From positions 124,001 to 188,000 of the IMG/VR virus record IMGVR_UViG_3300042502_001233: a DNA stretch of 64,000 nucleotides; one strand, given 5' to 3'. Every line of letters begins with the position of its first letter. Positions within the stretch are counted from its first letter, which is position 1. The notes beneath the pieces were generated by a model that made no database searches, had not been told where the DNA came from, and saw only the letters and a list, made by a program, of their open reading frames with translations. Below are positions 8,601-40,640 of the stretch, piece by piece. A program made the translations under genes and the position numbers.

Positions 8601-8983
8601 ACTGTAATTTGTGGTGCAAAAGATGAATTAAAATCAATATCGATATTGGTAATACCCAACGTTTCAGTATTTATAGTACCTTGTTCAAAAACTGTTGTTA
8701 AATCAGTATATTTTGTTGTTAAAACTTTTTTACCGTTTATATCACTTCCTTCAATAAAATTAAGTCTGATAGTGTTTGTTGTTTGAACAGCACCTTTATC
8801 ATCTTTAGCTGAAAGAACTGTACGCCCTTTTCTGTATGTTGATAATTTTACTGAAATATTTAAATCTTCAGTTTGAACCGAACGATTCATAGATGAAGGG
8901 TACCCGTAAAAATCATTAGGGTCTATTATTTTTGTTCTATTTCCACCGCTACAACCTATTTTAGTTATGTTACTATTCTCCAT
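2609..8983 (-). CDS. Baseplate hub / tail-associated lysin with C-terminal M15 peptidase and GH24 lysozyme domains
   Basis: 2124 aa. Hub-like segments (GITNIDIDF...ITVDFIDVRG; SAEVEMMGNAMVQPMMYFQLDNIPMFHGAYMITRVKHSI). M15 motifs (SLYRS..Q, SNHSWGIAVD, EYWHFEY). GH24 motifs (FEG...TWRGGYG, LVTRRKTEA). Confidence 0.75.
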   Translation of the reverse strand: MENSNITKIGCSGGNRTKIIDPNDFYGYPSSMNRSVQTEDLNISVKLSTYRKGRTVLSAKDDKGAVQTTNTIRLNFIEGSDINGKKVLTTKYTDLTTVFEQGTINTETLGITNIDIDFNSSFAPQITVDFIDVRGSSIFQNESDISNTDVNNPYAAFFQLPYPLFELEVKGYYGQPVTYCLHMIKFTSKFNSQTGNFEIKCNFIGYTYAMLSDMLVGFLKAIPFTKIGAEKFKNYNDGRDVPILNLVDLKIKVGQIDAAIQKLALNSNSSKILNSFSEGKEILNSILSEFTTFSTIGIEKKSEDEASYRFIVTKNADFTSDQRKMYQDLDTNVKTYIKKYNDLNITGLKLNESDFLPITYVPDLTIPLLNANSNERIDTSITGEELIKFKRDALIYVNDYMTFNDSFKFRIYDLRQTIDLLEKEKTKLDSNVEISNKSLANEIKDEITSELGFDPTVRNIIEIFTGLIEVFIETIYNVSQNAENNVDRTAELEKVFSETSKTTKTDITDVQLKGKKYFPWPDYSEYDAKTNTYVEKYLGSNPVIDSKLSIDEIKFIEDLLQAFLTANETENKADALAAGEEINWFPSNILDTRLFGYQKNPYQRSELISLEAVKRLMLIRAMIFLGYTNDEKYLTPEEIQTMAKIEANAIASAAQPALKNLLKNIKPDTIKDVTGVINDKPRKVITSTPNGYIYNYLFVGNNPSKEIRVLPISGDFNDKIIGGSSTKKITVANLDQTVYIPDTTIPTVGTPGAVKTTNYSYIVDNGSYENEDTRDTLKELSSTENFLTNYNSVAVTGAKNRKLIDGGIYVRMFTPSEFTTTEQLIDTSIKTESIINLEQLKNGEISQAGFNCFGGSYGIQEFVNMNYGDNTALNGLPLMYVFYSPDKDYGLSYTRKDSAKQQKLPNNKTLTSIYDFKPNTSSYLASNEFYSSMLSEVKVDSRDDKLLLHSGRKNNRELFNNLVNPNTGKYKISYPYIEHGFVYGSISSGTDKNTLSLFGSKWYYLQANSRMKKNNNTFINNISGKYTKALIFLNTLPFNLGDEILDNNPLFPKELRHLFDVRGGFVHTPRLWCAFIGGMLWWMSTEDPIIDGDFITGGGRGKEDPIVWKTTCGSSASPKYDATELNGNYLPRTVGRSANKIKSTDVLVNLPNQVKEEFKKIFFDFVNGTSEYTSFDTLRKNLEIWDENKPVTQFCAFVDSLYNTSNPKNNQARILPSQITNNLINYKNYNIINLSKQTSSLTLFLELNDDSTAVTNLLTALTKEEVIIANTGYRIWRGPKTENFGTSGSDLKDLRYPIYASNTNYDMYFKTLTTELSALTEGYSTATEKDAALNEIFNTTNLNDIKLMLYRSCKNIYDKWLGGVTNPDNIIFQCGENDNNEGNRKQTDLAMASRFGRTKARLIDSFRFVNRSFRDIGDELFINPIPLNDKLQDFPNTSAYEIISGLLGDNKFDFIALPTFINFHDDKVLETMFKPISMYEEPIKSCGPSFVCVYVGQKSKNLDLKDASTNYTNDGFDIRCDGVNLSSSIPPDYSSPLANNNGKPYEDALPVFVVRYGQQNQNLFKDITLDQSEFSESEESIKIVQDISMKGSNTNMSVGGQNMYNVYSVRSYSAEVEMMGNAMVQPMMYFQLDNIPMFHGAYMITRVKHSIKPNNMSTNFTGVRIRAAETPIIDVADAYMALIETLNVAGAGNASSGAVAGSFPPIVRTIIENGGSNGNVEVGNIKLVTVEDIKDVAQNVPKERRKMITEAVPALTEMLTEFVKFAKAEGYPTINKKYVGITSLYRSYEYQQELYNKNIKDGGNPGDVAEAGTSNHSWGIAVDLLFAPQKNGTYLKVGQWAPIDTDANKEGFSLEYNPSLKWFLDNSWKYGFIIPTTLRDKSNVDEYWHFEYHGTSAKCLYNKLPSTYGYTPKLDSGYKPVVKNPKGVDNKEAVYLENECDFKYISSGDGGVSGVPNSEIINSLTGDWVERSKLIIISFEGYVAKAKKDSGTWRGGYGTDNIIVSEGTQPSKVTYSTTFTKVQAQLTLTYDINNRFKKSIIGVLGQKNWDKLNDNQKAAIMSYSYNSGAGTLKSRGIVESITKNNFKQAASQIAAGPITGKGQGVLPGLVTRRKTEAKIFEKPV

Positions 8984-9321: not shown

Positions 9322-12300
9322 TTATGTATTAGTTGTTCTGTTTACACTAGCTGAATAATACCCTATAGAACTTTTAGAATCTGAAACATCCCAATTAAAT
9401 GACAAACTGTAACGTTCATCACTAGTATCATTTTTAGCAGCTAACAAGAATTTTAATTCTCTATTTTTTAACGGTATTTCCAAAACCCAGTTTTTATCTG
9501 TTGGTGAAACAGTTACTTCGGATTTACCTTTGAAAATTGTTGAATTATCATCTTTCCTTTTACCAGTTACAAAAAAGTTTATATTATCAATATTTGTGGA
9601 ATTTAACCTTACTAAAGATAACCTTCCTTTGTAATTTTTATCCTCAGATAACGAAAATTTAAGGTTAGGTTTATCTTCTGGTGGGTAGAACCCTAAACCA
9701 ATTTGAAGAATATCATCACCTTCAGAAAGTTCTTGATAACTTTCTATTTTAACACATTTAATAACTTCTTCATCTGTACCAGTTACTGTTGTTGCGGTTG
9801 TTGAACTTAATGTTGGTTGCGTTGAATTTTCAACACCACTATTAACTTTTTCTTCAGCTTTAACTTGGTCAACTTCTTTATTATTTTCATTAATAATATT
9901 TTCAGATATTATTATTTCTTCTGGTGAATATATCTTAGGTGTAAAATCATTATTAATGTAAAAATCACTTAAAGGAGCTTCTACTTTTTTAGTTTCTAAA
10001 ACACCATCTTTATTTTTCTCAGTTACAGTCCATGAAGGTCTATTCTTAGATAGATAATCAGCTCTTGTGTCGTAAACATGTGTGTTTGCAAAATAGTTAA
10101 ATGATAATGCATTTTGTAATTTGTTAATTGGTCCGAATAAACTTGAACCACCTAAAAATTTAAACGAAATATCAACGTTAGCAATCATTGGTTGAACACC
10201 AATACCTTCTGGGTTTAAATCCCAAACCAATGGTTCATAATCAATGTTTACATTTTCCATAATTATTTTTGTGTTATAGAAATCACCAATTCTCAATATA
10301 CAAACTGGAGCTCTACCAAATGCTAAATTATTAGCGCCTTGTTGTTCAAGTGTTGGGCCTTGTCTAGTACATTGTAATAAAAATGTCAATCTAGAATTTA
10401 AACCTTCTGGTGTTGTTGAGTGAAACGCTGGGTGAAAATATCTAATTTTTTCTCGAATAGAATCAAATACAAATTTATTTCCAGGTATTTCTTGACCAGT
10501 AGCTGGGTCTGTATAACTTTCCATCATACGTTCAAAATAATTACATTCAGTATAAAATTTATTTAAAATTTCTTTTTTTATTTGTGTACGTTCTATTTTA
10601 GTTATTGGTTCTGGTTGTAAAGCTTTTTCTTTCTCAGCAGCAAACTCTGGGTCGTATTCAACAGTTATTTCAACAAATCTGTCCAATTTACATTCTAAAA
10701 TATCTGTTGGTGGGTCTGGGTATTGAGCTGTTTGTATTGGGCAACCTGAACTTGTTTTAGCTTCAAATGTAGCTGTTTTAAATCTTTTACCTACATCAGA
10801 AGCTTCTATACCAGCACCCCATTTTTTCTTTAATTCTTTAATAATATATTCAGCTCTTTTTTTAGCTAATGTATTATTTGAATCTTTATTACCTTGTGGA
10901 CTTGCATATCCTTTAACTCTTATAGTACAATACTTACATTCATTTTTAAGATATTCAACCATAGCAGTGTTGTAGTCTGGGTCGTAATAACCAAAATACT
11001 TTTTACCGTTAATATCGTATTCTTTGCCTTTATAACTGCTCCAATTTAAACCAAAATTATATCTGTCATCCCAATTTCTAGTAACACCATTTACATCTAC
11101 TTGTGTTATATTACTAGGGTATAACCCTATCCCATAACCAACACCATTAGCATTAGTTGTATAATCAATAGCAGTAGCTAAACCACTAGGTGTACTTCCA
11201 CTTAACCCGTTCTCATAATTTTCAAATTGGTCTAGCTCAAAATTATCATTAGGGAAATATACATTTAATTTTGCCGTTGGTGGTTTTGGCGAATCTTGTT
11301 TAGGTTGGTCAACAACAACGTTTTTATTTATAACGGCATTTATTTCTTTTACTGTTAAATTCCTAATCATACCTTCAGTCGGGTCAACACAACCAGCAAA
11401 GTACGAAGCAATATAATTATCATCAGGACCATTTTGGCCTCTAAAAGCATTGTAGTAGCTTGGGTGGTCTACAATCACTTTAAACGACAAAGTACCACTT
11501 CTTTCTGTGTTGTTGTATGTATATACTGGTTCACCTCTACCAATAAATTTGTTTGATTCCCAATCCAAAGTATTGTTTTCAGTGAATTGAATATCATATG
11601 GTGGAAACCACATAATTCTACCTTTTTTTCCAGTTGTTAAATCACCTGGTCCTTTTTCACATTGTGGTAAATCATTATAAGGGTCCCCAGCCCATGCTAA
11701 GTTTTCAATACTAAACATAAATTTTTTAGGGTCTGTCGGTACATCGTCAATATATGGTGCTATTTTAACAAAACCAGCATCACCCAAGACGCTGTTTTCA
11801 GTTTTAAATCTATAAGGTGCTTTGGTCCTATCGTATAAAGGTTTGTGTCTAATAAGTTTATTAACACTATCATATCTATCTAAAGTTGTCCAACTTCTAC
11901 AGAAGTTATTTTCAGCTTCAGCTCCAGATGAATTTACACGACCAGTTTCTAAATCGTATCTACCAGATGCTAACACAGCACTACCCTTTGATACACCATT
12001 GTTGTTGGCTGTTTGAATTTGAGTTGAATTAACACCCATCTCACCCTTAACAGTAACAAGACTTTTCATACCTACACTGTTGAATAAAGTTTGAGTTTTA
12101 ATCAACAATGATTTTTTATCACCTTGAATTAAATCAAAACTAGATACATTGTTAACAGCGCTTCCATTATCGCTAGTCCAACTAAATGGAATTGAACTAA
12201 CTACTCTATTATCATAACCATAAAAGCCGTTATTACCAGGTGAAGGATTTGTTAATGTTTCTTCAGGACTTTCAAAACCAGAATTAGAAACCATTGCTTC

Positions 12301-13599
12301 TCTATTATAACTAATTTGTGGAATTATTTCACCTTTATTCCAAAATTTATCAACATTACCAGATTTACTGTAAGCATATACTTTTGTATCGGCAGATTTA
12401 ACTGCTGGTCGACCTTTATTATCATTATAAGCTGGAACGTACCCATTTCTAAAAGGGTTAGTTGAACTATTTATAGCTCCGTTAGCCATCACATTGCTAA
12501 TCAAAGATTTTATCTGACCTTTACCTGTGTTTAAAATCATTGCGTTAGCTCTGTCTATGTTTGCTATATCACCATTTTCAGATTGAAAAATTGAGCCTGA
12601 GTCATCCAAATAACTTCTTGGTATTTGAAAACCTAATATATTAGCCGCTGTATTTAATAATCTACCACCAGTAGATTGAGCAACTGTAATCTTGTAGTTA
12701 GGTCTAAACGCTGGTGCTGAACCATCTTTAATAAGATTTAAAATATTTTCACCAATATTCAATCTACCCAACAAATCTTGTTGTACATTGAATGCTGCAT
12801 TGTTTGCTAATGCCAACGCTAATTGTTGTCCACCGATAGTTCCTAATTTTGTGTCGTTTAACAAACCAGTTGCCCCTAACACTCTACCAGCCAAAGAACT
12901 TCTAATATCAAAGTTTGGTACAACACTACCGTTGGTACCTATACCTACACCTTGACCGTTTAATACACTACCTAATATATTAACAACTGCGTTTCCACCT
13001 GTACCACCTTGATTTAAACCACCGAACACATCTAGATACCCTGGGATTTGTTGAGATATATCTAAAGGTTGATAATCAATAAAAGAAGCCATATCAATTT
13101 GTTTTGATTCATCTAAATATAAATTTTTGATTACATTGGCTTTTTTGTAATTTGCTTCTGTTGTTTTAGCTAAAATACCATATTGTTCAATTTGTGGGTT
13201 ATCACCTGTTGGATATGGTAAGTTACCACCTAGAGGCCATTCAGAGTTGATATAATCAGTGTTTAGTATATCAGGTATGTAATTGATACTTTCTACATTG
13301 TTTGCAACGCTAGGGTCATTTTGAAAGGTATTATATATAACATTCAAATCTTTAAACAACAAACCATTGGTAATTAAAGGTAAACCAATTGGAACTGTAA
13401 GAGCACCACTACCTACCATAGTATCTAATACTGGTTCACCAATACGTGGACTACCATTAATTGAAGTTGATATGAAAGGATATTGTGGTGCTAAGTTTAA
13501 ATTCAATAAAAAATCACGAATACCATAAGTAACTGCGATATCATTGATGTTGTTTTTTGTAGTTGGTGTAGGTGCACCTTGATTATAAAATATAGGCAT
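9322..13599 (-). CDS. Baseplate/tube-initiator-like protein with an internal OmpA_C-like domain
   Basis: 1425 aa. Tube-like segment (FPPYDIQFTE...FIGRGEPVYTYNNTERSGTLSF). OmpA-like motifs (VYFPND, VKGYASPQG...NNTLAKKRA, DRFVEI). Confidence 0.6.
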   Translation of the reverse strand: MPIFYNQGAPTPTTKNNINDIAVTYGIRDFLLNLNLAPQYPFISTSINGSPRIGEPVLDTMVGSGALTVPIGLPLITNGLLFKDLNVIYNTFQNDPSVANNVESINYIPDILNTDYINSEWPLGGNLPYPTGDNPQIEQYGILAKTTEANYKKANVIKNLYLDESKQIDMASFIDYQPLDISQQIPGYLDVFGGLNQGGTGGNAVVNILGSVLNGQGVGIGTNGSVVPNFDIRSSLAGRVLGATGLLNDTKLGTIGGQQLALALANNAAFNVQQDLLGRLNIGENILNLIKDGSAPAFRPNYKITVAQSTGGRLLNTAANILGFQIPRSYLDDSGSIFQSENGDIANIDRANAMILNTGKGQIKSLISNVMANGAINSSTNPFRNGYVPAYNDNKGRPAVKSADTKVYAYSKSGNVDKFWNKGEIIPQISYNREAMVSNSGFESPEETLTNPSPGNNGFYGYDNRVVSSIPFSWTSDNGSAVNNVSSFDLIQGDKKSLLIKTQTLFNSVGMKSLVTVKGEMGVNSTQIQTANNNGVSKGSAVLASGRYDLETGRVNSSGAEAENNFCRSWTTLDRYDSVNKLIRHKPLYDRTKAPYRFKTENSVLGDAGFVKIAPYIDDVPTDPKKFMFSIENLAWAGDPYNDLPQCEKGPGDLTTGKKGRIMWFPPYDIQFTENNTLDWESNKFIGRGEPVYTYNNTERSGTLSFKVIVDHPSYYNAFRGQNGPDDNYIASYFAGCVDPTEGMIRNLTVKEINAVINKNVVVDQPKQDSPKPPTAKLNVYFPNDNFELDQFENYENGLSGSTPSGLATAIDYTTNANGVGYGIGLYPSNITQVDVNGVTRNWDDRYNFGLNWSSYKGKEYDINGKKYFGYYDPDYNTAMVEYLKNECKYCTIRVKGYASPQGNKDSNNTLAKKRAEYIIKELKKKWGAGIEASDVGKRFKTATFEAKTSSGCPIQTAQYPDPPTDILECKLDRFVEITVEYDPEFAAEKEKALQPEPITKIERTQIKKEILNKFYTECNYFERMMESYTDPATGQEIPGNKFVFDSIREKIRYFHPAFHSTTPEGLNSRLTFLLQCTRQGPTLEQQGANNLAFGRAPVCILRIGDFYNTKIIMENVNIDYEPLVWDLNPEGIGVQPMIANVDISFKFLGGSSLFGPINKLQNALSFNYFANTHVYDTRADYLSKNRPSWTVTEKNKDGVLETKKVEAPLSDFYINNDFTPKIYSPEEIIISENIINENNKEVDQVKAEEKVNSGVENSTQPTLSSTTATTVTGTDEEVIKCVKIESYQELSEGDDILQIGLGFYPPEDKPNLKFSLSEDKNYKGRLSLVRLNSTNIDNINFFVTGKRKDDNSTIFKGKSEVTVSPTDKNWVLEIPLKNRELKFLLAAKNDTSDERYSLSFNWDVSDSKSSIGYYSASVNRTTNT

Positions 13600-13673
13600 A
13601 ATATTTCTTTTTATATATAAATACTATAGTACCAAAAAAGTTTAGAAAATAAATGGTTGATAAGTCTTTAAAA

Positions 13674-13696
13674 ACAAAAAAGGCGCAATTCGCGCC
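13674..13696 (-). terminator. Intrinsic terminator
   Basis: Minus strand GGCGC-gaatt-GCGCC followed by TTTTTTG. Confidence 0.7.
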
Positions 13697-13713
13697 AATT
13701 TTTAATTTATCAG

Positions 13714-13787
13714 TATAATATATAATTTATTATTATATTATATTATATTTATTATATTTTATTTATTATTATTATATTTTATATATA
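13714..13787. repeat. 74-bp pure A/T tract of degenerate TATTA/TATAT units
   Basis: No G or C between 13714 and 13787. Confidence 0.8.
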
Positions 13788-13818
13788 CAAAAATACGATT
13801 TTTTTCCCACAAAGTCAA
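13788..13818 (-). promoter_or_regulatory. Orphan sigma70-type promoter
   Basis: Minus strand reads TTG-N20-TATTTTTG; no ORF before the terminator. Confidence 0.5.
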
Positions 13819-13875
13819 GTTATCTCAACTAATTTTTTTAATTATTTTATATATAATTGATAATCAATAAATTAA

Positions 13876-16368
13876 TTATCCAGCTATTTTACCATTTTTA
13901 TTCATTTCCAATTGAGAATTAACCATACTAGCGATTTGAGTTCTAAAAGCTGTGGTTTTCATAATTTCCAGGGCTATTGCATTTGTTCCTGGTATATTTA
14001 TATTGATATTACCACTAACATTCATATCACCATGTTCAACTTCCATTTTTGAAGATTGATTACTTTGTTGATTGATTGCTCTATCAGCTGGTCCATATGG
14101 TTCCATAGATAAAAATCTTTCTTTATTAGGTATCGGTGTTATTTTACCATTTTCTAACACTCCTCTACCTTTAGAAAATTCAGCCCCTAACCCTTTTCTA
14201 GGTGCAAATACAGCATCGTTTTGTGGTTCACTAAAATATTCATTATAAGCACCGATACCACCACCAATTAAACCACCAGCCAAAGCACCCCATGGACCGA
14301 ACATCATACCAAGTGCTGCTCCTTGTAACGCAGCGCTACCAACACCCATACCTTTACCCATAGCATCATTAGGGTCATCTCTTTTACCTCTTAAATAATC
14401 AACACCCATACCAGCAGCACCTAAACCTAAACCAGCACCCATTTTAGCACCAGTACCCCATTTATTTAATTTTGTGGCTTCTCTAGCAGAAGCAAATCTA
14501 CCAGCACCCATACTTCTCATAGTTCCATAATCCTTACCAAACCCAGTACCACCTCTATTACTAGCAGCACCACCCATAGAAAACATACCAGGAGAAGCAC
14601 CACCACCAGAAAAACCTTTTGTACCTATATTAAAACCTTTAGCCAAAGCTAATCCGTTAGCAAACCATGTTGCTAATTTTAACGCCCCCCACGTAGCTAA
14701 AATACCTGTAGGTCCTAAAACATCGGCAATAGTAAATATTATTTTACCAGCAGTAACGACAAATTCACCAACTGTTTTAGCAATAGTTTCAATTTTTTCA
14801 CCCCATTTATTTTCTTCCCATTTATCAGTTAATTCATTAAATTCTGGTAATAATTTTTTATTTATTGTATCAACAAAAGGTAATAAATAAATTTTTATAC
14901 CATTAACAAAATTAGTAAAAGCTTCATCAAATGTTAGAGCTTGTTCTGCCCTTTCTTTCATATCAGCTTTTTGTTTCATATCAATTGCTAAAATTTCTTT
15001 ATCAGTTGTAGTTAAAGCGCTAATAAGTTTTGCTTGACCTTTAACCATAACAGTAGCTTTTCCATCTTTAAATTCAGCTGTGTTTGCAATAAATTCTTGT
15101 AATTCTGGACTAACACCACCAACTTGAGCTTTTATTTTACTCAACTTGAATGCTGCTTTACCAGCTTCAACCAATTTTTCATATTCTAAACCTGTTTGTT
15201 GTGCAACTATTTTTAATCTGTGCATTTCCATAGCACCCATTTCAATACTACCATCTTTTCCAAAACTCATAGATTGTTTTGCAGCGTTTGCAATCTCTTC
15301 AGTCAAACCTTCCATATCATTACGAGCCATATACATCAAATGAAACGGGTCAGCCATTTGTGCCCATGCACCACCCATAACTTGCAATTGTGCTGACATA
15401 TCAACAGCGCCTTCAATATCAAATAGTTTATCAGCCATTCCACCAGCGAATTCCATATCAACACCTAGTTTACTAGCTGTCATAGCCATTTTAGCCAAAC
15501 CTTTAACACCGTCTTTAAAACGATATTTATTTAACATTTTAATGTTTCCAGCAATGTTTTTGATTACCTTTGAAGCGTTAAGACCCATAGCGTGAGAATC
15601 ATTCAAAGTTTGATTCATAAAATCACCAGTTTTTTCAGCTGAAATACCTTGTTTGTCCATATCTGCCGCCATTCTAGCAGCACCTTCAGCACCCAAATCA
15701 GCAAACTTGGATAGTTGACCCAAAGCAACAAGACTTTTTTCATTCATTTGAACACTTCTACCTAGTTCTTCACTATAATCAGATTGTATTTTAGATAAAT
15801 CTTGAATTGTAACACCAATTTTTGATGTTTTTTTAGATGCATCAAGAATATTTTTTCTAAACCCTTCAGATTGGTTAGATAAAACACCCATAGACATTGC
15901 TGAATTTTTAATTGCTTTTTCCATTTCAAAAAGACCTAAAGATTTTACGACACCTTTTAAATTATTGAATAAATTAAAAGATGTTTTTAAAGCAGCGGCA
16001 GTGGTTAAAGAAACTTTATTAGCATCTTTAAGGGCAGAATTATATATTTGACCTTGTTTTTTTAATTTTTCATTTTGCTTATCAAGTAAAATTAATTTTT
16101 CTCTATCAATGTCTAATTGATTTTGTTGTTCTTGAGTCAAAATTAAAGTATTGGCTTTTATTTTATCATCAATATCTTTAATTTTTTGTCTTAAATCATT
16201 TGTTAATTTAATACTTTTATTATAAGTTTTTTGTAACTCAGAATATTTTTTAATATTTTCAATATAAGAATCATAGCTACTATTAATTTCTTTTCTTAAA
16301 TCAGCTTCCTTTTCTATATAATAAAGAGCATCTATTGCTTCTTGTTGTGCTTTAGTTTTTTTAGCCAT
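13876..16368 (-). CDS. Tail tape measure protein
   Basis: 830 aa; Ala/Lys/Met-rich helical body with Gly-rich hydrophobic C-terminal segments; lies downstream of the tube and chaperone genes. Confidence 0.75.
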   Translation of the reverse strand: MAKKTKAQQEAIDALYYIEKEADLRKEINSSYDSYIENIKKYSELQKTYNKSIKLTNDLRQKIKDIDDKIKANTLILTQEQQNQLDIDREKLILLDKQNEKLKKQGQIYNSALKDANKVSLTTAAALKTSFNLFNNLKGVVKSLGLFEMEKAIKNSAMSMGVLSNQSEGFRKNILDASKKTSKIGVTIQDLSKIQSDYSEELGRSVQMNEKSLVALGQLSKFADLGAEGAARMAADMDKQGISAEKTGDFMNQTLNDSHAMGLNASKVIKNIAGNIKMLNKYRFKDGVKGLAKMAMTASKLGVDMEFAGGMADKLFDIEGAVDMSAQLQVMGGAWAQMADPFHLMYMARNDMEGLTEEIANAAKQSMSFGKDGSIEMGAMEMHRLKIVAQQTGLEYEKLVEAGKAAFKLSKIKAQVGGVSPELQEFIANTAEFKDGKATVMVKGQAKLISALTTTDKEILAIDMKQKADMKERAEQALTFDEAFTNFVNGIKIYLLPFVDTINKKLLPEFNELTDKWEENKWGEKIETIAKTVGEFVVTAGKIIFTIADVLGPTGILATWGALKLATWFANGLALAKGFNIGTKGFSGGGASPGMFSMGGAASNRGGTGFGKDYGTMRSMGAGRFASAREATKLNKWGTGAKMGAGLGLGAAGMGVDYLRGKRDDPNDAMGKGMGVGSAALQGAALGMMFGPWGALAGGLIGGGIGAYNEYFSEPQNDAVFAPRKGLGAEFSKGRGVLENGKITPIPNKERFLSMEPYGPADRAINQQSNQSSKMEVEHGDMNVSGNININIPGTNAIALEIMKTTAFRTQIASMVNSQLEMNKNGKIAG

Positions 16369-17410: not shown

Positions 17411-17689
17411 TTAATTGAGTGGTATATTACCAGATTTCATTCTTGATTTTAATGCGTCTCCAGAAATGCTTGTTTTTCTATTACCCTTGCTGTTGGTTTG
17501 GTTTTTCTGTATGTTTTCAACCTCTTCTTGTCTTTCAACGTTTTGTTTCATCAATAAACTTAAAAAGAATCTTCTTTCATAAGTCGGCATACACAGTACA
17601 TCTGTGTAAGACATTTTTAAATGTTGCATACAAATATAAACCTCTTCTAATAACGGAACTTTATAGCTTGATGTTAGGCCAAAAAAAGT
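17411..17689 (-). CDS. Tail assembly chaperone C-terminal extension (probably reached by frameshift)
   Basis: Frame overlaps the upstream gene at a T7 run. The track start at 17740 is TTG inside the upstream gene. Sequence LLEEVYICMQHLKMSYTDVLCMPTYERRFFL resembles chaperone 'T' parts. Confidence 0.55.
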   Translation of the reverse strand, partial: TFFGLTSSYKVPLLEEVYICMQHLKMSYTDVLCMPTYERRFFLSLLMKQNVERQEEVENIQKNQTNSKGNRKTSISGDALKSRMKSGNIPLN

Positions 17690-18950
17690 TGAAGTTAAGT
17701 GGAAGAAAGGTGGCCACAGACCCACCCCCAGGAGTCTCAACCTCTATATTCAAATCAATACCAGATTCAATAGAATCAACATATGCATCAAATGCTCTAG
17801 CATCAGATATTCTCATAGAATTAGCGATGTCTCTAATCATTCCTCTATCTCTACTACCGTTTACTTCAACAATCATTCTTTCTAATCTATATGTATTTGA
17901 ATTATTTACTGGGATGTTTCTTTCTTTTTCATCGGTAACAATTTTTTCGATAGCATCTACATCACCCATAGTCAACAATCTGAATTTAATTTCAGCTTTG
18001 GTCAAAGGTAATTGAAAATAAAACAATCCTTCTTCATCTGGATTTTCATTTAACTCTATTGTTTTTAACTCATTAAGGTTAATTTCAGTATCAAAAGGTT
18101 CGCTTAACTCATCCAACAAAGTAACTGGATACATTTCACCATATGCTGTAGCTCTTAACCACAACATAATAGCATTTCTATCACCAGGCAATAAATCTTT
18201 ATATCTAAGCGTCGGTTCCAATATCTTTCTGTTGATAAGAATCTCTAAAAACTCCCCGCTTTGAAGTAAGTTTGGACTTGTAAGAATGTTTTCATCCGCT
18301 GTAGTCATATACGCTAACCTTACACTCTCTTTTTTGTTTTTGTACAATTTACCTTTTGAAGGTAACGGAATAACGTCAAATGGTGCGTTGTAGTTAGGTT
18401 GACTCAATTCTAGAATATAAGGGTCAACACCAGTTTGTGAAGTCACAAAAGGTTCTATTCTAGGTTGTGTAATAGCTGGTGAAGACGGTTGTGGTGTGTT
18501 GTAACCACTTGGTTGATTTGTTTGCATATTTGTTGTTGTATTATATTGTCTATTCATTGCTTCTTCAGACATTTTTTGATAGTTTTGAGTTTGTTGTCTA
18601 TTTTTAGCTAATTGTTCATCTCTCAGTTTCATCAAATCTTCGTTTGGGTCTTTTTGAGTTACAAATCTAGTAGTCTGTCTTTCAGATAACGCTGGGTCTT
18701 TAACAACACCAACAGTGTTTTTCATTTCTAATTGAGCGGCTGTTCTAGCCATCATCATTTCAACACTATTGTTTTGGTTTAGATAATTGTATTGTTCTCC
18801 TTCAACGTTTTCAGGAACTTTTACTGATGAATAAATTTGATTTACTACTTGTGATTTTTCTGCTTCATACGCGGCCAATTTTGATTGTTCTTCTGCTGCG
18901 TTTTGTATTTGTGATTGCGAAGGAATCACGTTAGGTCTTTTTTCTGACAT
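17661..18950 (-). CDS. Tail assembly chaperone / T4 gp26-like baseplate hub assembly protein
   Basis: 429 aa; DVIPLPSKGKLY...MTTADENILTSPNL...DRNAIMLWLR motifs; lies between tube and tape measure; ends FFWP. Confidence 0.65.
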   Translation of the reverse strand: MSEKRPNVIPSQSQIQNAAEEQSKLAAYEAEKSQVVNQIYSSVKVPENVEGEQYNYLNQNNSVEMMMARTAAQLEMKNTVGVVKDPALSERQTTRFVTQKDPNEDLMKLRDEQLAKNRQQTQNYQKMSEEAMNRQYNTTTNMQTNQPSGYNTPQPSSPAITQPRIEPFVTSQTGVDPYILELSQPNYNAPFDVIPLPSKGKLYKNKKESVRLAYMTTADENILTSPNLLQSGEFLEILINRKILEPTLRYKDLLPGDRNAIMLWLRATAYGEMYPVTLLDELSEPFDTEINLNELKTIELNENPDEEGLFYFQLPLTKAEIKFRLLTMGDVDAIEKIVTDEKERNIPVNNSNTYRLERMIVEVNGSRDRGMIRDIANSMRISDARAFDAYVDSIESGIDLNIEVETPGGGSVATFLPLNFNFFWPNIKL

Positions 18951-19058: not shown

Positions 19059-19107
19059 GATATTTATGTTTGTAAAAATTTGTAACTTCTTGATAATCAA
19101 ATAGTTT

Positions 19108-19596
19108 TTAAAACAAAAGTATGGCGCGGTCAAACCTTAACGTTGCAGTAATCTCTGCGATACCGTCATCCTCGAATGATAAGTCACCAAAACCAACGTT
19201 TGTTAACATAGTACCATCCAATAACCATTTCTCGATTACAACACCTGTAGGGTCAAGCATTTCTAACTCTACTGGACGTTTGTAACCAGCAGCATAACCT
19301 TGACGGCCAGTGATTGATTCAGAGTGAAGACGAACCCACTCCATAATTGCTTGTGAAGCAGATGGACCAATTGGGTCACGGAAAGTAACGTCTATCGCCT
19401 CCCAAGTAAATCTACCGATAACCCATGTAGATGTGTTAAGGAAAGGGATTTCTACCTCATTTTGTGTGATAGAAGGTCTAGAAGCAGAAGATAACCACCA
19501 TTGTTGGATACCTAAATCTGCTGGGAATGTAATTAACCAACGATTCTTTTTCTTAGGTTCGTATGGTAAGGGCATTTTCATTAATAAATCAGCCAT
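19108..19596 (-). CDS. Tail tube protein (T4 gp19-like)
   Basis: 162 aa; YEPKKKNRW, SASRP, GRFTWEAIDVTFRDPI, EKWLL...GDL, ITATLRFD motifs. Confidence 0.85.
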   Translation of the reverse strand: MADLLMKMPLPYEPKKKNRWLITFPADLGIQQWWLSSASRPSITQNEVEIPFLNTSTWVIGRFTWEAIDVTFRDPIGPSASQAIMEWVRLHSESITGRQGYAAGYKRPVELEMLDPTGVVIEKWLLDGTMLTNVGFGDLSFEDDGIAEITATLRFDRAILLF

Positions 19597-26361: not shown

Positions 26362-29202
26362 TTATATATTATCAAAAGAAGCACCAGTATTCATGATAAC
26401 AAACTCAAGTTGAATAAACTCTAAAGCTCTAGTTGGCTTCAAGAAAATTTGACCTGTAAGTTGATTTCTGTCGATATCTTCTGGGTCGTTTGAAAGAACC
26501 ACTCTAAAGTCTGTAAGACCTCTTTCACTTCTAATGTTATCTAAGATTGGGTTAACCAACGCTAAGAATTGATTTCTAACCACGTTATCATTTTGTTCAA
26601 ACAACAATCTGATAGAAACAGCAGAGATAAGTTTTCTTGCTTGTAACAACAATCTTCTTACGTTAATTCTGTCAAGAGCAGACTCTTTAACTTGCATTGT
26701 TTTATTACCCCAGATTTTAATACCATCTGTTGTAAACGTAGCGATTGGGTTGATTCTAGCTTCGTACAACGTATCTCTTTCAGCAAGAGTAAGTTTTTTA
26801 CGAGCTTGGATTGCATCAACATCACCTCTGTTAATACCAGCAACCGCGAACCAAGGGAAAGCAATGTTGTCAGTAAGAGCGATGTTTCTAACTACATCTC
26901 TTGTTGGCGGCATCCAAATGTAAACGTTGTTTTCTGTATCGTTTACTTGAATCCATGGCCAATAAGTACAAGAGTAGTTACTATCATACATACCATCTAA
27001 ACGGTCAGAAACTTCTTCAGCGCTTATTACATCACCAGATAAATCAGTATCTGGTGTTGTCATAATGTACAACGAGTCAGCTCTATCTTGTTCAACCATA
27101 TCGATTGTAGCTTCAATTAAGTTGCTGTTGTAATCGTTGTCGATACCTGGGGTTGCGAATACGTTAATATTAACAGCTTCTGGGTTTCTAAATGTCCAAA
27201 TAGCTTCTAGGTAAGCATAGTAATCAGAGTTGATACCAATATCACCGTTAGTAAGAGTTCTATATTTGAATATTTCACTTTGTAAACCAGCTTGTCCGTT
27301 AGTACCATTTACGACGAAACTATCTAAATTACTTCTTCTAGTTCTGTAAATATCCCAACCATCAAAACCACCGTAAGGTACAAATGTAAATTTACGTGCA
27401 AATATTTTTTCATAGTCAGTTCCTAACACACCAGCTTCAGTTCTAAACTCAGCATTACCAGTATCAAATAGGAATACTGGAGAATATGTGTCACCACTTG
27501 AGTTAATAACAATTTTAACATTGTCAATTGTAGCACCAGTAGCGTCAATATCCATGTGGAAACCATGTGTCATACCAGTCCACATATTTGAATCACCAAC
27601 TGTTGGAATACCTTTATAGTCAAAGAAATCAGAATCAATACCTAAAGTCTCAGAAAGACCTAAGAAAACTTTACGTTTATTTTCAAAAGCGCTATACGCT
27701 CTTTTATACGTTAACGTTGGGTCAACAACTGATTGTCCGTTTGAATCGTAATCTCTAATAGGGAAACCAATAAAACCAGCTGGGAAAGTTGTGCTAGTAT
27801 CACTAGTGTCATCCATTTCAATAAGAACGTAAGATGATTTTGAAGGGTATTCACCATTATAAGTACCAATTCTTCTAGCTATATAGTTGTTAGATGTTGG
27901 GTCAAGAGTACAACGACTAAAGCTTTCCAAGATTGTTGGTTGAGCGTCAGTATCGAAATAACTTCTTATAATAACATCAAACTCTTTAGTGTCTAATTTA
28001 ATATTTCTAATAGATATTTTGAATTGTTCGTTAGCAGCGTTACCATCAGAAATAGTCCAAAATCTGAATAATCTCAATACTTTAGTACCACGTAATTCTG
28101 ATACAACATATGGAGTTACAGCTGGGCTGTATTCTTGTAAGTAATCATCAAAACTTCTGTCATAATCAACAAGAGCTTGTTTTAAACCTCTGATTTTACC
28201 AGCTGCTCTGTCATCTTTAAACATTTCTCTATAGAATTCTTCAACAAACAAAGCTGTATTACCATCATCGTTAGTTCTACCTAATACTCTAGGTAAATAA
28301 TTTTGTTTTGTATTATCCATAGATAGTTGGTAACTAAACGCACCTTGTGTTGTTGATGTACCAGTCAATACAAAATCACCAACAGGGTTTGTAGTAGAAG
28401 TTGTAATACTTGTACTGAAATTTACGTTAGTTGAAGCTGTTATTTCAAATGCTGGAGATTGTAAAGTTGGGTCAACAGAACCTCTAGAACGTAACAACGC
28501 AACCAATTTATCTTCAATACCGCTATAAACAGTACCTGAATAAGTTACTGTAACACCAGTTGTAGAACCTGTTACAAAACCACCTGAAGTACCTACTGAA
28601 GTTACTTTTAAATCAAAAGAAATACCGTTAAAATTAGCACCCACTTTTTCATAATAAGGACCAACACTAACAACATCATTTACAGATGAAGTAGCCAAGA
28701 ATGCTAATTCAGAAGTCAATGTACCATCATTGATAAGTGTTTGAATCAAAGGAACTGAAGAAACAACTGTTACGTTAGTACCACCAGTTGTTGCTGTAAA
28801 TGTTATGAAATTTGAAGTTACTGAAGTTCCAGTGTTTGTTGTTACAACCGAAGCTGGGTCCAAAGCAGCATCCAAAGTGATACCCCATGCAAAACCAGCA
28901 TCATATCCAGAAAACCCTAATACTCTAGTTACGAATAATTGGTTTGATTGTGTTAAATATGATTTAGCGATGTATGGTAATTCATATTTAGGTGCCCCTG
29001 TGTCTTTAACTCTAGTCGCATTTTGCCCACCAAAGAAAGATTGGAACTCGCCATAGTTACCAACAAATATAGGTTGGAATGCTGGACCAATTGTAGTCTC
29101 ACCAACTAAACCTAATGTTGTTACACCTATCTGACGTGTGATAAAAGATAAGTCTTTTTCTGAAGTATATACACCAGGACTTACGAATACTTTTGTTGCC
29201 AT
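26362..29202 (-). CDS. Tail sheath protein
   Basis: 946 aa; VFVSPGVYTSEKD, GLVGETTIGPAF, YWPWI, PWFAVAG..RG, WGNKT, LDRINVRRLL, KPTRALEFI. Confidence 0.92.
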   Translation of the reverse strand: MATKVFVSPGVYTSEKDLSFITRQIGVTTLGLVGETTIGPAFQPIFVGNYGEFQSFFGGQNATRVKDTGAPKYELPYIAKSYLTQSNQLFVTRVLGFSGYDAGFAWGITLDAALDPASVVTTNTGTSVTSNFITFTATTGGTNVTVVSSVPLIQTLINDGTLTSELAFLATSSVNDVVSVGPYYEKVGANFNGISFDLKVTSVGTSGGFVTGSTTGVTVTYSGTVYSGIEDKLVALLRSRGSVDPTLQSPAFEITASTNVNFSTSITTSTTNPVGDFVLTGTSTTQGAFSYQLSMDNTKQNYLPRVLGRTNDDGNTALFVEEFYREMFKDDRAAGKIRGLKQALVDYDRSFDDYLQEYSPAVTPYVVSELRGTKVLRLFRFWTISDGNAANEQFKISIRNIKLDTKEFDVIIRSYFDTDAQPTILESFSRCTLDPTSNNYIARRIGTYNGEYPSKSSYVLIEMDDTSDTSTTFPAGFIGFPIRDYDSNGQSVVDPTLTYKRAYSAFENKRKVFLGLSETLGIDSDFFDYKGIPTVGDSNMWTGMTHGFHMDIDATGATIDNVKIVINSSGDTYSPVFLFDTGNAEFRTEAGVLGTDYEKIFARKFTFVPYGGFDGWDIYRTRRSNLDSFVVNGTNGQAGLQSEIFKYRTLTNGDIGINSDYYAYLEAIWTFRNPEAVNINVFATPGIDNDYNSNLIEATIDMVEQDRADSLYIMTTPDTDLSGDVISAEEVSDRLDGMYDSNYSCTYWPWIQVNDTENNVYIWMPPTRDVVRNIALTDNIAFPWFAVAGINRGDVDAIQARKKLTLAERDTLYEARINPIATFTTDGIKIWGNKTMQVKESALDRINVRRLLLQARKLISAVSIRLLFEQNDNVVRNQFLALVNPILDNIRSERGLTDFRVVLSNDPEDIDRNQLTGQIFLKPTRALEFIQLEFVIMNTGASFDNI

Positions 29203-39597: not shown

Positions 39598-40640
39598 TAA
39601 GGTATTCTAATTAATCTAATATTATTATCAAGACAAAATTTTGTCTTGATAGAATCGTTATGTTTTATTTTTAAAAAACCTAGTTCACCGCCAAATTTGT
39701 TTATAGGTTTATAATGTTGGATTCCGTCGTATTCAATACATATATTATGGTTTGGTAAATAAAAATCAAACGGTAGTACTTGAATGTTTTTGCAATTTAC
39801 AAACGTGTGTTGTTGCTTAAATAAAATATTATTTTCAACTAGATATTCCCTAATCTTTTTTTCACCTTTTGATTCTTTACAAATAGGGCAACCATTGCCC
39901 CTCAAGTGCATATTAGGGGTCTGGTTAAACATACCATGAACAGGGCAAATTATTTTAACTTTAGTTTTTGATTTTAAATAATCAACCATAGAGTAGTCAT
40001 ATTTATTACCATGTATTTTTTTAGCTTCTAAAATAAAATCATTATTAGTCTTATCCCTACCAACACATTTTGGACATCCTTGTTTTAATTTAATGTGAGC
40101 ACTTGGTAATTGTTCAAACACACCATGAACAGGGCAAATTATTTTCATTTTAGTTTTAACGTTTTTAAACTGTATTGATGAATAATCATATTTATCACCA
40201 TGTGTTTTTTTAGCTTCTAAAAGAATATCTTTAGTTGTTTTAAACAACCCATTACACTTACCACATGTTTGACCTTTTAAATGATTATCTGGTGTTTGTT
40301 CAAACATACCATGAATAGGGCAAATTATTTTAACTTTAGTTTTAGCATTTTTATAATTAACTAAAGAATAATCATATTTATTATTGTGTATTAAAATAGC
40401 CTCATTAATAAATATATTATCCTTTTTCCTAGTATTTTCACTAATTTTATCATAACCACATTTATTACAACCTTGTCCCCTAGAAATATGGTGATGTGGC
40501 GTTTGTTCAAACATACCGTGAATAGGGCAAATTATTTTTACTTTGGTCCTAACATCTTTATAATCAACTAATGAATAATCATACTTATTTTCATGTATTT
40601 TTTTAGCTTTTTCGATAAATTTTAAATTTTTATTTTCCAT
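39552..40640 (-). CDS. Free-standing endonuclease 3 (Zn-ribbon repeats + PD-(D/E)XK/DUF559-like nuclease)
   Basis: Four CPxHG...H...C..C repeats; LPFDFYLP...IEYDGIQH; RLIRIPY; late motif upstream. Confidence 0.75.
   Translation of the reverse strand: MENKNLKFIEKAKKIHENKYDYSLVDYKDVRTKVKIICPIHGMFEQTPHHHISRGQGCNKCGYDKISENTRKKDNIFINEAILIHNNKYDYSLVNYKNAKTKVKIICPIHGMFEQTPDNHLKGQTCGKCNGLFKTTKDILLEAKKTHGDKYDYSSIQFKNVKTKMKIICPVHGVFEQLPSAHIKLKQGCPKCVGRDKTNNDFILEAKKIHGNKYDYSMVDYLKSKTKVKIICPVHGMFNQTPNMHLRGNGCPICKESKGEKKIREYLVENNILFKQQHTFVNCKNIQVLPFDFYLPNHNICIEYDGIQHYKPINKFGGELGFLKIKHNDSIKTKFCLDNNIRLIRIPYYEVISESLNIFLTK

What the first reader, a model, noticed from the sequence alone, without database searches (positions are those of the whole stretch)
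13674..13818. Orphan early promoter, 74-bp pure-AT tract and terminator: small RNA or R-loop origin
A host-type promoter in the middle of the late tail operon points into a G/C-free repetitive tract and then an intrinsic terminator. This predicts a ~100-nt non-coding transcript. The next gene has its own late motif at 13616-13623. A promoter plus a downstream unwinding element is the layout of T4 R-loop origins (established). An AU-rich protein-sponge RNA is the alternative.
Basis: partly seen in the sequence, partly recalled or inferred. Interest (0 to 1): 0.6.

Follow-up and report, generated by a model that had tools for sequence, protein, structure and literature searches.

The report
Orphan promoter with AT-only tract
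Between two tail genes of a 362-kb uncultured phage lies a small transcription unit with no gene: a host-type promoter, about 75 bases of only A and T, and a terminator; nearly every relative examined keeps it, and it is a good candidate for a transcription-primed replication origin, or else an unusual A/U-only RNA.

Summary
Reading 13818 down to 13670 gives a promoter, a 74-bp G/C-free tract (13714-13787) and a GC hairpin with a U-run. The tract is the longest AT-only run and the least stable duplex in the 362-kb genome.

The promoter is not best read as E. coli-type. It fits the Bacteroidota sigma-A pattern, TTG-N20-TAnnTTTG, which is about 4-fold enriched in this genome.

Among the relatives from IMG/VR and metagenomes, the unit sits at the same place in all that retain this junction. 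The promoter boxes are invariant and only the 'nn' positions vary. The tract keeps its composition but not its sequence or length (45-104 nt). The hairpin covaries at all six pairs.

What follows the tract varies: a terminator, a small ORF plus terminator, or the next gene directly. So the selected unit is promoter plus tract.

There is one such tract per genome. There is no ORF, no Rfam family and no fold.

Function is not shown. I favour a transcription-activated unwinding element of the T4 oriF/oriG type (about 0.4). A trans-acting unstructured A/U RNA (0.25) and a cis-acting leader role (0.15) remain open. No expression data could be obtained.

The parts
13876..16368 (-). Upstream gene: 830-aa tape-measure-like tail protein. 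Its stop codon lies 58 nt before the promoter's TTG.
   Evidence: ORF; PHROG 167 tape measure, E 2.9e-12; 74%-identical relative L001.
13857..13867 (.). 11-bp palindrome TTGATWATCAA between the tape-measure stop codon and the promoter. Possibly a site for a dimeric protein; function unknown.
   Evidence: Conserved 223-399 nt upstream of the next gene's ATG (256-288 nt in 10 of the 12) in 12 of the 20 loci scanned, counting the window; a 13th locus (L029) has one copy, inside the layout-B ORF. Only 2 intergenic copies in the own genome.
13788..13818 (-). Host-type (Bacteroidota sigma-A) promoter: -33 TTG at 13818-13816, a 20-nt spacer with an A-run, and the -7 box TATTTTTG at 13795-13788.
   Evidence: Gapless alignment of 23 loci: TTG, G-T and TTT are invariant, A and G nearly so, and only the two 'nn' positions vary freely. 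The class is about 4x enriched in the genome. The -7 box lies at -12..-5 in Flavobacterium (PMC9723704).
13714..13787 (-). 74-bp tract of A and T only, starting at the base after the -7 box, so it includes the predicted start site (about 13782-13784).
   Evidence: Longest AT-only run and least stable duplex of the genome. Relatives carry 45-104 nt AT-only runs at the same place with unrelated sequence. It is the only run of at least 45 nt in 4 of 5 large relatives; the fifth has one more of 48 nt.
13674..13783 (-). Predicted non-coding early RNA of about 110 nt: an A/U-only 5' part, a 3' hairpin and a U-tail. The ends are inferred, not mapped.
   Evidence: No minus-strand ORF of 20 aa or more. 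No Rfam family. The tract RNA is no more structured than shuffles in 13 of 15 loci (z < -2 in L021 and L031).
13670..13696 (-). Intrinsic terminator: stem-loop 13696-13682 plus U-run 13681-13670, with an A-run on its 5' side, so it is potentially bidirectional.
   Evidence: All 6 stem pairs covary across 16 loci: 89.6% of cells are paired against 31-66% for slid controls, and 0 of 500 shuffles reach this. The hairpin ends about 80 nt before the ATG in 15 of the 20 loci where one was found (range 61-100).
13616..13655 (-). The next gene's own promoter-like region: conserved CATTTATTTT (13655-13646) and TATTTATA (13623-13616), 16 nt before the ATG.
   Evidence: Conserved in relatives. TATTTATA precedes 57 genes at a fixed 11-16 nt distance.
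9322..13599 (-). Downstream gene: 1425-aa protein with no family match. Its N-terminal 400 aa served as the anchor for finding relatives.

Best explanation
SHOWN BY SEQUENCE COMPARISON. This is a self-contained transcription unit with no gene, kept by purifying selection in a clade of huge (about 150-370 kb) phages whose promoters are of the Bacteroidota type. A host sigma-A promoter fires into 45-104 bp of DNA containing only A and T. In the window, transcription should end about 110 nt later at a covarying intrinsic terminator. The part that is always kept is promoter plus AT-only tract. What follows the tract differs between lineages.

INFERRED MECHANISM. The unit works through transcription of the most easily melted DNA in the genome. 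Early after infection host RNA polymerase starts at about 13783. The A-rich transcript stays or re-anneals on the T-rich template within the tract as an R-loop. The displaced strand and the RNA 3' end then give the phage replisome an entry point and a primer. The genome encodes a family-B polymerase and a T4 RNase H-like flap nuclease. [quoted passage not shown]

The terminator mainly ends the upstream tail operon and keeps early transcription out of the next late gene.

My confidence in the anatomy is about 0.85-0.9. My confidence in the origin function is about 0.4, which is the figure given below.
For: (1) Conservation. 38 IMG/VR loci were anchored on the neighbouring gene, whose protein identity ranges from 44 to 72%. 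About 27 of them carry an AT-only run of 45-104 nt at this junction. Several of the others retain a G/C-interrupted or partial form. One further metagenome contig carries it too.

(2) Promoter. The alignment is gapless. Only the -33 TTG and the G-TAnnTTTG positions are invariant or nearly so, and the two free 'nn' positions vary. This genome has 101 intergenic sites of this pattern.

(3) Tract constrained by composition only. From the -7 box to the hairpin, 15 distinct loci span 72-107 nt with 2.7% G+C and unrelated sequences that differ by indels.

(4) Helix stability. The tract is the genome-wide minimum.

(5) Copy number. There is one such tract per genome in the own genome and in 5 large relatives.

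(6) Outlier. Behind the other 100 intergenic sites of this promoter pattern the AT-only run is at most 20 nt, and the next ATG typically lies 15-35 nt away.

(7) Three layouts. P-AT-terminator occurs in the window and most loci. P-AT-ORF(UVR motifs)-terminator occurs in L027/29/30 and L032-34. P-AT running directly into the next gene occurs in L014/15. The ORF-bearing loci are nested among ORF-less ones. So the promoter and tract persist whatever follows them.

(8) Energetics. The sense RNA:DNA hybrid over the tract is nearly iso-energetic with the duplex: -70.6 against -71.5 kcal/mol in the window. The antisense hybrid is much weaker at -51.6 (nearest-neighbour values recalled from Sugimoto 1995).

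(9) Precedent. T4 oriF/oriG are about 100 bp: a promoter plus an A+T-rich DUE. R-loop formation is sequence-independent and the DUE is replaceable. oriG lies in a late tail-fibre gene, and oriF is also the uvsY promoter (PMC3016281).

(10) Enzymes. The genome has PolB and a T4 RNase H-type nuclease.
Against: There are no expression, R-loop or replication data.

GC skew and third-position skews show no inflection at the site. They are dominated by gene orientation, so they neither support nor refute an origin.

The tract's composition is strand-specific: A 58%, U 39%, C:G 28:7, and UU at 0.52x expectation. It mirrors ordinary 5' leaders of this phage: A .53, U .31, C .12, G .036. A purely duplex-level unwinding element should be strand-symmetric, so some constraint acts on the RNA or on the act of transcription.

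A strong terminator right after the tract is not part of the T4 or T7 origin layouts. A gp59-type helicase loader was not detected, although that search had no working control. No RNase HI was found.
Confidence: 0.4

Rival explanations
1. The product matters, not the DNA. An abundant early RNA of about 110 nt, made of a structure-free A/U 5' part on a terminator hairpin, acts in trans as a decoy or sponge. Its targets would be proteins that bind single-stranded A/U-rich RNA without sequence specificity. Candidates are ribosomal protein S1 or the 30S subunit of Shine-Dalgarno-independent Bacteroidota translation, or host or phage ribonucleases.
For: The constraints are strand-specific and RNA-like. 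G is avoided more than C (7 against 28). A exceeds U. U residues are mostly isolated. The tract RNA is no more folded than shuffles in 13 of 15 loci. The composition is an exaggerated form of this phage's real 5' leaders. A 3' hairpin with a U-tail would stabilise the RNA. Conservation of composition alone is what non-specific protein binding would select for. The phage encodes an RNase R/II-like enzyme with CSD and S1 domains.
Against: The 3' hairpin is not always present. In L014/15 the tract runs straight into the next gene, and in six loci an ORF intervenes. No Hfq is encoded by the phage. No partner protein has been identified. There is one gene copy and no repeat unit. Nothing shows that the RNA accumulates.
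Confidence: 0.25
2. It is a cis-acting leader. The tract is an extra-long, unstructured A/U 5' UTR that boosts translation or expression of whatever lies downstream. In the window's lineage the original small ORF was lost. The promoter persists because terminator read-through gives early, low-level expression of the 1425-aa gene and the genes after it.
For: In six loci the tract is the 5' UTR of a 162-185-aa ORF with two UVR motifs. In L014/15 it leads directly into the big gene. The composition equals that of real leaders. Bacteroidota translation relies on unstructured leaders rather than Shine-Dalgarno sites (PMC9723704; PMC7797042 abstract).
Against: Most loci, including the window, have no ORF. 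They have a strong, covarying terminator directly after the tract, and the next gene has its own conserved promoter-like motif. Ordinary leaders here are 15-35 nt, and none of the other 100 has an AT-only run of more than 20 nt. The ORF has no homologue anywhere in this genome, yet promoter and tract stayed intact over deep divergence.
Confidence: 0.15
3. It is another DNA-level or transcription-control role. One option is a lambda pR'-tR'-like unit whose short RNA is extended by a phage antiterminator into the late genes. Another is a protein-loading or binding platform, with the palindrome as operator and the tract as a flexible or melted region. For example, it could be a clamp-loading enhancer for late transcription.
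For: The layout of promoter, about 110 nt of non-coding sequence, terminator and then a block of late genes resembles lambda pR'/6S RNA/tR' (own knowledge). A conserved 11-bp palindrome lies about 40 nt upstream of the promoter.
Against: The downstream gene has its own recurrent promoter-like motif. The terminator is absent or distant in some lineages. The palindrome is missing in the more distant relatives that still keep promoter and tract. No antiterminator was sought or found.
Confidence: 0.12
4. It has no function of its own. It is a slippage-prone AT microsatellite in an intergenic spacer next to a chance promoter-like match.
For: The tract contains short tandem units and changes length between close relatives, for example 75 against 90 nt and 73 against 79 nt. 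Three metagenome contigs break at or in it.
Against: The promoter boxes are invariant across 23 loci while neighbouring bases vary. The tract has stayed nearly free of G/C at one locus across lineages whose neighbouring protein is only 44-72% identical. It is unique in each genome. It is retained next to an IS insertion and next to ORF gain or loss.
Confidence: 0.05

Closest known systems
Bacteriophage T4 origins oriF (ori-uvsY) and oriG (ori-34): promoter plus downstream unwinding element, R-loop primed
   Same: Both are minimal units of about 100 bp. Each has an early or middle promoter read by host polymerase, immediately followed by an A+T-rich element whose sequence is unimportant. oriG lies inside the late tail-fibre region, and oriF doubles as the promoter of a protein gene, as in the ORF-bearing relatives here. 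A T4 RNase H-type nuclease is present (PMC3016281).
   Different: Here the promoter is a plain Bacteroidota sigma-A type with no MotA-like box. The tract is strictly G/C-free and up to 104 bp. A strong terminator usually follows. There is one element per genome, whereas T4 has several origins. No R-loop or replication evidence exists. The phage is not a close T4 relative: tail proteins match only at PHROG or remote level.
Bacteriophage T7 primary origin: promoters 1.1A/1.1B followed by a 61-bp AT-rich region (own knowledge, not checked here)
   Same: Promoter(s) transcribing into a short AT-rich stretch where RNA-to-DNA switching occurs.
   Different: T7 uses its own RNA polymerase and primase-helicase. 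The T7 region is not G/C-free and has no terminator.
Lambda pR'-6S RNA-tR' late control unit (own knowledge)
   Same: A constitutive host-type promoter, a short non-coding RNA and a strong terminator, placed in front of late structural genes.
   Different: No Q-like antiterminator or qut-like element has been identified. The next gene has its own promoter-like motif. The lambda RNA is not compositionally extreme.
Protein-sponge sRNAs with A-rich motifs, for example Pseudomonas CrcZ titrating Hfq/Crc (own knowledge)
   Same: A non-coding RNA with many A-rich single-stranded motifs and a terminator hairpin. Its function depends on motif density rather than on a fold.
   Different: No Hfq in the phage. 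The host is unknown. There are no discrete repeated motifs. The RNA is conserved in composition only. It is not in Rfam.
Ordinary Shine-Dalgarno-less 5' leaders of Bacteroidota and of this phage
   Same: Same strand-specific composition (A>U>>C>G), and the same position directly behind a TAnnTTTG promoter.
   Different: It is 3-5 times longer and almost free of C and G. In most lineages no ORF follows it.

Membership tests
Bacteroidota sigma-A promoter (-33 TTG / -7 TAnnTTTG) | TTG and TAnnTTTG boxes at the class spacing | tested here: met
   TTG-N20-TATTTTTG at 13818-13788, the same spacing as most of the 135 genome matches against about 33 expected.
Bacteroidota sigma-A promoter (-33 TTG / -7 TAnnTTTG) | Box positions conserved and free positions variable among relatives | tested here: met
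   Across 23 loci TTG, G-T and TTT are invariant and the 'nn' positions vary as TT/TA/AA/AT.
Bacteroidota sigma-A promoter (-33 TTG / -7 TAnnTTTG) | Mapped transcription start about 5 nt after the box | not testable with these tools
The start at about 13783 is inferred from PMC9723704.
Intrinsic (Rho-independent) terminator | GC-rich stem-loop followed by a U-run | tested here: met
   6-pair stem with 5 G-C pairs, then TTTTTTGTTTTT.
Intrinsic (Rho-independent) terminator | Stem maintained by compensatory changes | tested here: met
   All 6 pairs show changes on both sides. 89.6% of cells are paired and 0 of 500 shuffles reach this.
T4-type R-loop origin (promoter + DUE) | Pre-late promoter directly upstream of an A+T-rich, helically unstable element within about 100 bp | tested here: met
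   The tract starts at the base after the -7 box and is the genome-wide stability minimum.
T4-type R-loop origin (promoter + DUE) | The unwinding element acts independently of its sequence | tested here: met
   Indirect evidence only: relatives keep the composition but not the sequence or length.
T4-type R-loop origin (promoter + DUE) | Persistent RNA-DNA hybrid in the element | not testable with these tools
   Only an energy estimate is available: the sense hybrid is about equal to the duplex (recalled parameters).
T4-type R-loop origin (promoter + DUE) | Supports initiation of replication (plasmid assay, 2D gels, marker frequency) | not testable with these tools
   No read data. Skews are uninformative.
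T4-type R-loop origin (promoter + DUE) | Phage enzymes to process and use the R-loop (RNase H-type nuclease, polymerase, helicase loader) | tested here: inconclusive
   A T4 RNase H-like FEN and PolB are present. gp59 was not found, but that search had no positive control. No RNase HI.
Hfq-type sponge sRNA | A cognate Hfq/Sm protein is available | tested here: not met
   No Hfq in the phage genome, while the control genomes ring. The host was not examined.
Type III toxin-antitoxin antitoxin RNA (ToxI-like) | Tandem array of a fixed repeat unit between promoter and terminator, followed by the toxin gene | tested here: not met
   Only imperfect low-complexity repeats with 72-86% matches. The downstream gene is a 1425-aa tail-region protein.
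Any Rfam family | Score at or above the gathering threshold | tested here: not met
   No hit in the window. The best sub-threshold match is RAGATH-35 at 18.7 bits against 38.9, E 0.47.
Lambda pR'-tR' antitermination unit | Q-type antiterminator and its binding or pause elements | not tested
   Only the layout resemblance was noted. The next gene has its own motif.

The most novel reading that the evidence does not exclude
This is an RNA gene conserved in composition only. It makes an early, structure-free RNA of about 100 nt that contains essentially only A and U. The RNA acts in trans as a decoy for the Shine-Dalgarno-independent initiation machinery (S1/30S) or for single-strand-specific ribonucleases of Bacteroidota hosts, and so biases the cell toward phage gene expression. 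No described RNA family is defined by the absence of G and C rather than by sequence or fold.
Probability: 0.2. Interest if true: 0.8.

Novelty: new variant of a known kind. Interest (0 to 1): 0.6.

Why it matters
To my knowledge, replication origins and non-coding RNAs of huge uncultured phages have hardly been mapped. This element is short, unique in each genome, easy to recognise and under clear selection. It therefore gives a concrete handle on how a whole clade of about 360-kb phages with Bacteroidota-type promoters starts replication, or else on an unrecognised kind of phage RNA.

It also shows that phage regulatory elements can be found and dated by conservation of composition alone, which sequence-based or fold-based searches miss.

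On the practical side:
- The promoter analysis assigns the phage to a Bacteroidota/FCB-type host from sequence alone.
- The tract explains why assemblies of these phages tend to break at this junction.

Tried and rejected
I replaced it with the Bacteroidota pattern.
- Near and protein searches of GenBank phages with the region, the tape-measure protein and the intergenic DNA: there is no relative. The only hits are weak low-complexity matches to Lak, Listeria and Fusobacterium phages, which I dismissed.
- Small ORFs: the only ones are two 21-aa frames on the opposite strand. Reading the first (13653..13718) in L002 by eye from the output, it stops after four codons, so I dismissed it.
- A conserved RNA fold in the tract: none. 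In 13 of 15 loci the MFE equals that of shuffles (L021 z -2.0, L031 z -3.9).
- Phased A-tract curvature: there is no 10-11 nt periodicity.
- Cumulative GC skew and third-position skews as origin evidence: uninformative.
- A homologue of the relatives' UVR-motif ORF elsewhere in this genome: none.
- Searches for the promoter block outside the clade in IMG/VR and JGI metagenomes: they returned only the same phage lineage plus one new contig.
- Comparable AT-only runs in other phages: a Flavobacterium phage (160 kb) and an uncultured 484-kb phage have none of 45 nt or more. Prevotella phage Lak-A1 has one 62-nt run, but it is a plain gene spacer with no promoter box seen.
- Hfq, bS21 and RNase HI in the phage: absent.
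I did not attempt it any other way, so no reads were laid.

Full report
CONTEXT

The window is bases 124,001-188,000 of a single 362,018-bp IMG/VR virus record. The record has 31.4% GC and CheckV rates it 100% complete.

The genes around the finding all lie on the minus strand and form a myovirus tail block:
- sheath, 26362..29202
- tube, 19108..19596
- a baseplate-hub-like gene, 17661..18950
- an 830-aa tape-measure-like gene, 13876..16368
- after a 276-bp spacer, a 1425-aa gene with no family match, 9322..13599
- a 2124-aa protein with VanY and lysozyme domains

No GenBank phage is close. Megablast and tblastn with the tape-measure protein found nothing, and the sheath protein reaches only 27-39% identity over part of its length.

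THE OBSERVATION

Reading the minus strand from the tape-measure stop codon gives, in order:
- an 11-bp palindrome, 13867-13857
- TTG, 13818-13816
- a 20-nt spacer with an A-run
- TATTTTTG, 13795-13788
- 74 bases of A and T only, 13787-13714
- 17 more bases with one C and one G
- the hairpin GGCGCG-AAT-TGCGCC, 13696-13682
- TTTTTTGTTTTT
- about 50 nt further on, CATTTATTTT and TATTTATA (13623-13616), 16 nt before the ATG at 13599

The 74-bp run is the longest AT-only run in the genome. The next is 47 bp, and Markov-1 simulations reach 29-34 bp. It is also the least stable 75-bp duplex window, 4.8 sd below the genome mean.

No minus-strand ORF of 20 aa or more exists in the spacer. The two 21-aa plus-strand frames look like chance; read by eye in L002, the first stops after four codons. 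Rfam has nothing at gathering level. The best sub-threshold hit has E 0.47.

THE PROMOTER

The same bases fit TTG-N20-TAnnTTTG, the -33/-7 pattern of the Bacteroidota primary sigma factor. The -7 box lies at -12 to -5 in Flavobacterium psychrophilum (PMC9723704).

This pattern occurs 135 times in the genome against about 33 in Markov-1 simulations. Of these, 106 are on the strand that carries most genes. 101 are intergenic. In most of them the next ATG lies 15-35 nt after the box.

So the phage relies on host-type promoters of a Bacteroidota (FCB-group) host. This one sits in the tail block, where the few other promoters of this type in the window's tail block lie in front of plus-strand genes: two homing-endonuclease genes, a 91-aa ORF and a helicase.

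With G13788 at -5, the start site should be about 13782-13784 and the RNA about 110 nt long.

This site is the outlier of its class. Behind the other 100 intergenic sites the AT-only run is at most 20 nt.

RELATIVES

The N-terminal 400 aa of the 1425-aa protein recovered 38 IMG/VR loci at 44-72% identity. Pattern searches added one metagenome contig.

About 27 loci show an AT-only run of 45-104 nt at this junction.

A gapless alignment of 23 promoter regions has invariant TTG, G-T and TTT. The A and G of the -7 box are nearly invariant. Free variation occurs exactly at the two 'nn' positions (TT, TA, AA, AT).

The tract sequences are unrelated to one another and differ by indels even between close relatives. 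Yet from the -7 box to the hairpin, 15 distinct loci contain only 2.7% G+C over 72-107 nt.

The hairpin stem changes between lineages (GGCGCG, GGCAC, GACAC, GCCC, GGTACC, GGGGGC and others). All six pairs show double changes. 89.6% of cells are paired against 31-66% for slid controls, and 0 of 500 shuffles reach this.

In five large relatives (155-369 kb) the tract is the only AT-only run of 45 nt or more, apart from one 48-nt run in one of them.

The promoter block was not found anywhere else in IMG/VR or in JGI metagenomes.

Two other phages tested, a Flavobacterium phage and an uncultured 484-kb phage, have no run of 45 nt or more. Prevotella phage Lak-A1 has one 62-nt run, but it is an ordinary gene spacer.

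WHAT IS CONSTANT AND WHAT IS NOT

Three layouts exist:
- A (the window and most loci): promoter, tract, terminator.
- B (L027/29/30 and L032-34): promoter, tract, then a 162-185-aa ORF with two UVR motifs, then the terminator.
- C (L014/15): promoter, a 104-nt tract, then the big gene directly with no GC hairpin.

In L017 an IS-like element with a TnpB-like ORF (identified from its sequence, no family scan run) was inserted downstream, and the unit was kept.

In L013, L016, L020 and L021 the tract is interrupted mainly by C.

On a tree of the neighbouring protein, the ORF-bearing loci are nested among ORF-less ones. The ML topology needs two changes for layout B, although the strongly supported branches alone do not force more than one.

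The ORF has no homologue in the window's genome.

Whichever state is ancestral, promoter plus tract has been kept with and without an ORF, and with and without an adjacent terminator. The selected unit is therefore the promoter and the AT-only DNA it transcribes.

CLUES TO THE LEVEL OF ACTION

Points favouring a DNA or transcription-coupled role:
- The tract is the genome's stability minimum.
- There is one copy per genome.
- Constraint is on composition only.
- The 3' context does not matter.

Points favouring a constraint on the RNA or on transcription, because the composition is strand-specific:
- On the sense strand A is 58% and T 39%.
- C outnumbers G 28 to 7.
- TT is at half its expectation, and T residues are mostly isolated.
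- There is no 10-11-nt periodicity.
- The RNA is no more folded than shuffles in 13 of 15 loci.

The 54 ordinary 5' leaders behind host-type promoters in this genome have the same bias: A .53, T .31, C .12, G .036. Intergenic DNA in general has G above C. The tract therefore looks like an exaggerated leader.

The A-rich, UU-poor sense RNA also gives an RNA:DNA hybrid almost as stable as the duplex it would replace: -70.6 against -71.5 kcal/mol in the window. The antisense RNA would give -51.6. The nearest-neighbour values there were recalled from Sugimoto et al. 1995 and not checked. This fits an R-loop, but it is also just a restatement of A>U.

GC skew follows gene orientation, and third-position skews show no clear step at the site.

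MECHANISM

I favour a transcription-activated unwinding element that works as an R-loop-type origin, with confidence about 0.4.

[quoted passage not shown] R-loop formation there does not depend on specific sequence, and the element can be replaced by a heterologous one. oriG lies in late gene 34. oriF is the uvsY promoter, so the origin transcript is also an mRNA (PMC3016281). These features match layouts A and B here.

The genome encodes a family-B polymerase within a 1611-aa ORF and a T4 RNase H-type flap nuclease. A search for a gp59-type loader was uninformative, and no RNase HI was found.

Steps shown: the promoter class, the conservation, the terminator, the uniqueness and the instability of the tract.
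Steps inferred: transcription itself, the R-loop and priming.

Rivals:
- A trans-acting, structure-free A/U RNA that titrates A/U-binding proteins (0.25). The leader-like, G-poor composition and the 3' hairpin fit this. The variable 3' context and the lack of a partner protein count against it. The phage has no Hfq but does encode an RNase R/II-like enzyme.
- A cis-acting super-leader, or read-through expression of the downstream gene (0.15).
- Other DNA-level or antitermination roles (0.12).
- A neutral microsatellite (0.05).

COMPARISON AND NOVELTY

The unit works like a T4 or T7 promoter-plus-AT-rich origin. It cannot be filed as one, because the defining functional tests (R-loop formation, initiation of replication) cannot be done here.

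It differs from those origins in its strictly G/C-free tract, its plain host-type promoter and the terminator that usually follows.

It belongs to no Rfam family. It fails the tests for ToxI-like and Hfq-sponge RNAs.

I rate it a new variant of a known kind, with interest 0.6.

LIMITS

I did not try to get round that, so no reads were laid and no expression evidence exists.

The host is inferred from promoter type only.

The 'late' timing of the TATTTATA motif is an assumption based on the genes it precedes.

Noticed in passing
window 13616-13623 and genome-wide: A second promoter-like motif, TATTTATA (often ATATTTATAAT), lies 11-16 nt before the ATG of 57 genes, including sheath and other tail genes. 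It is the reverse complement of the T4 late box TATAAATA, which precedes only 10 genes here.
   Followed up: partly
window 19681-21111 (+) and 24525-26333 (+): Two paralogous HNH/homing-endonuclease genes (PHROG 559, E 1e-131 and 1e-164) are inserted on the opposite strand inside the tail-gene block. Each has its own host-type promoter.
   Followed up: no
window 13857-13867 and 19090-19100: The palindrome TTGATWATCAA has only two intergenic copies in the genome, each a few bases after the stop codon of a tail gene (tape measure, tube). The first is conserved in relatives; the second is not.
   Followed up: partly
window 2609-8983 (-): A 2124-aa protein carries VanY (D-Ala-D-Ala carboxypeptidase) and phage lysozyme domains at its C-terminus. 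It is probably a tail-associated cell-wall hydrolase.
   Followed up: no
window 34424-35125, 47523-47902, 39927-40381: Long in-frame tandem repeats lie inside three ORFs: 48/96/192-nt units in the 921-aa ORF, 42/126-nt units in the 515-aa ORF, and 189-nt units in the 362-aa ORF.
   Followed up: no
genome 310,714-312,705 (L056:1715-3706, minus): The phage encodes a 663-aa RNase R/RNase II-type exoribonuclease with RNB, two cold-shock-like OB domains and an S1 domain.
   Followed up: partly
window 41938-46773 (-): A family-B DNA polymerase domain lies inside an unusually long 1611-aa ORF.
   Followed up: no
L001 end; L026 and L028 starts: Three IMG/VR contigs end or begin at or inside this unit. 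L001 stops 47 nt after the tape-measure stop codon, L028 starts within the tract and L026 starts just before the hairpin. This suggests coverage drop-out or length heterogeneity at the AT-only tract.
   Followed up: no
L017:4771-5937: In one relative an IS-like element with a 388-aa TnpB-like ORF (identified by eye, no family scan run) is inserted between the unit's downstream motif and the big gene. Its near-identical sister L016 lacks it.
   Followed up: partly
L036-L039, promoter spacer: Near-identical contigs differ by one A (A8 against A9) in the A-run of the promoter spacer. This changes the box spacing from 20 to 19 nt.
   Followed up: no
genome ends (1-230 and 361,900-362,018): The last 100 bases of the record recur at positions 130-229, and the same promoter appears at both ends. 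The assembly therefore overlaps itself (circular or terminally repeated), although IMG/VR labels it linear.
   Followed up: no
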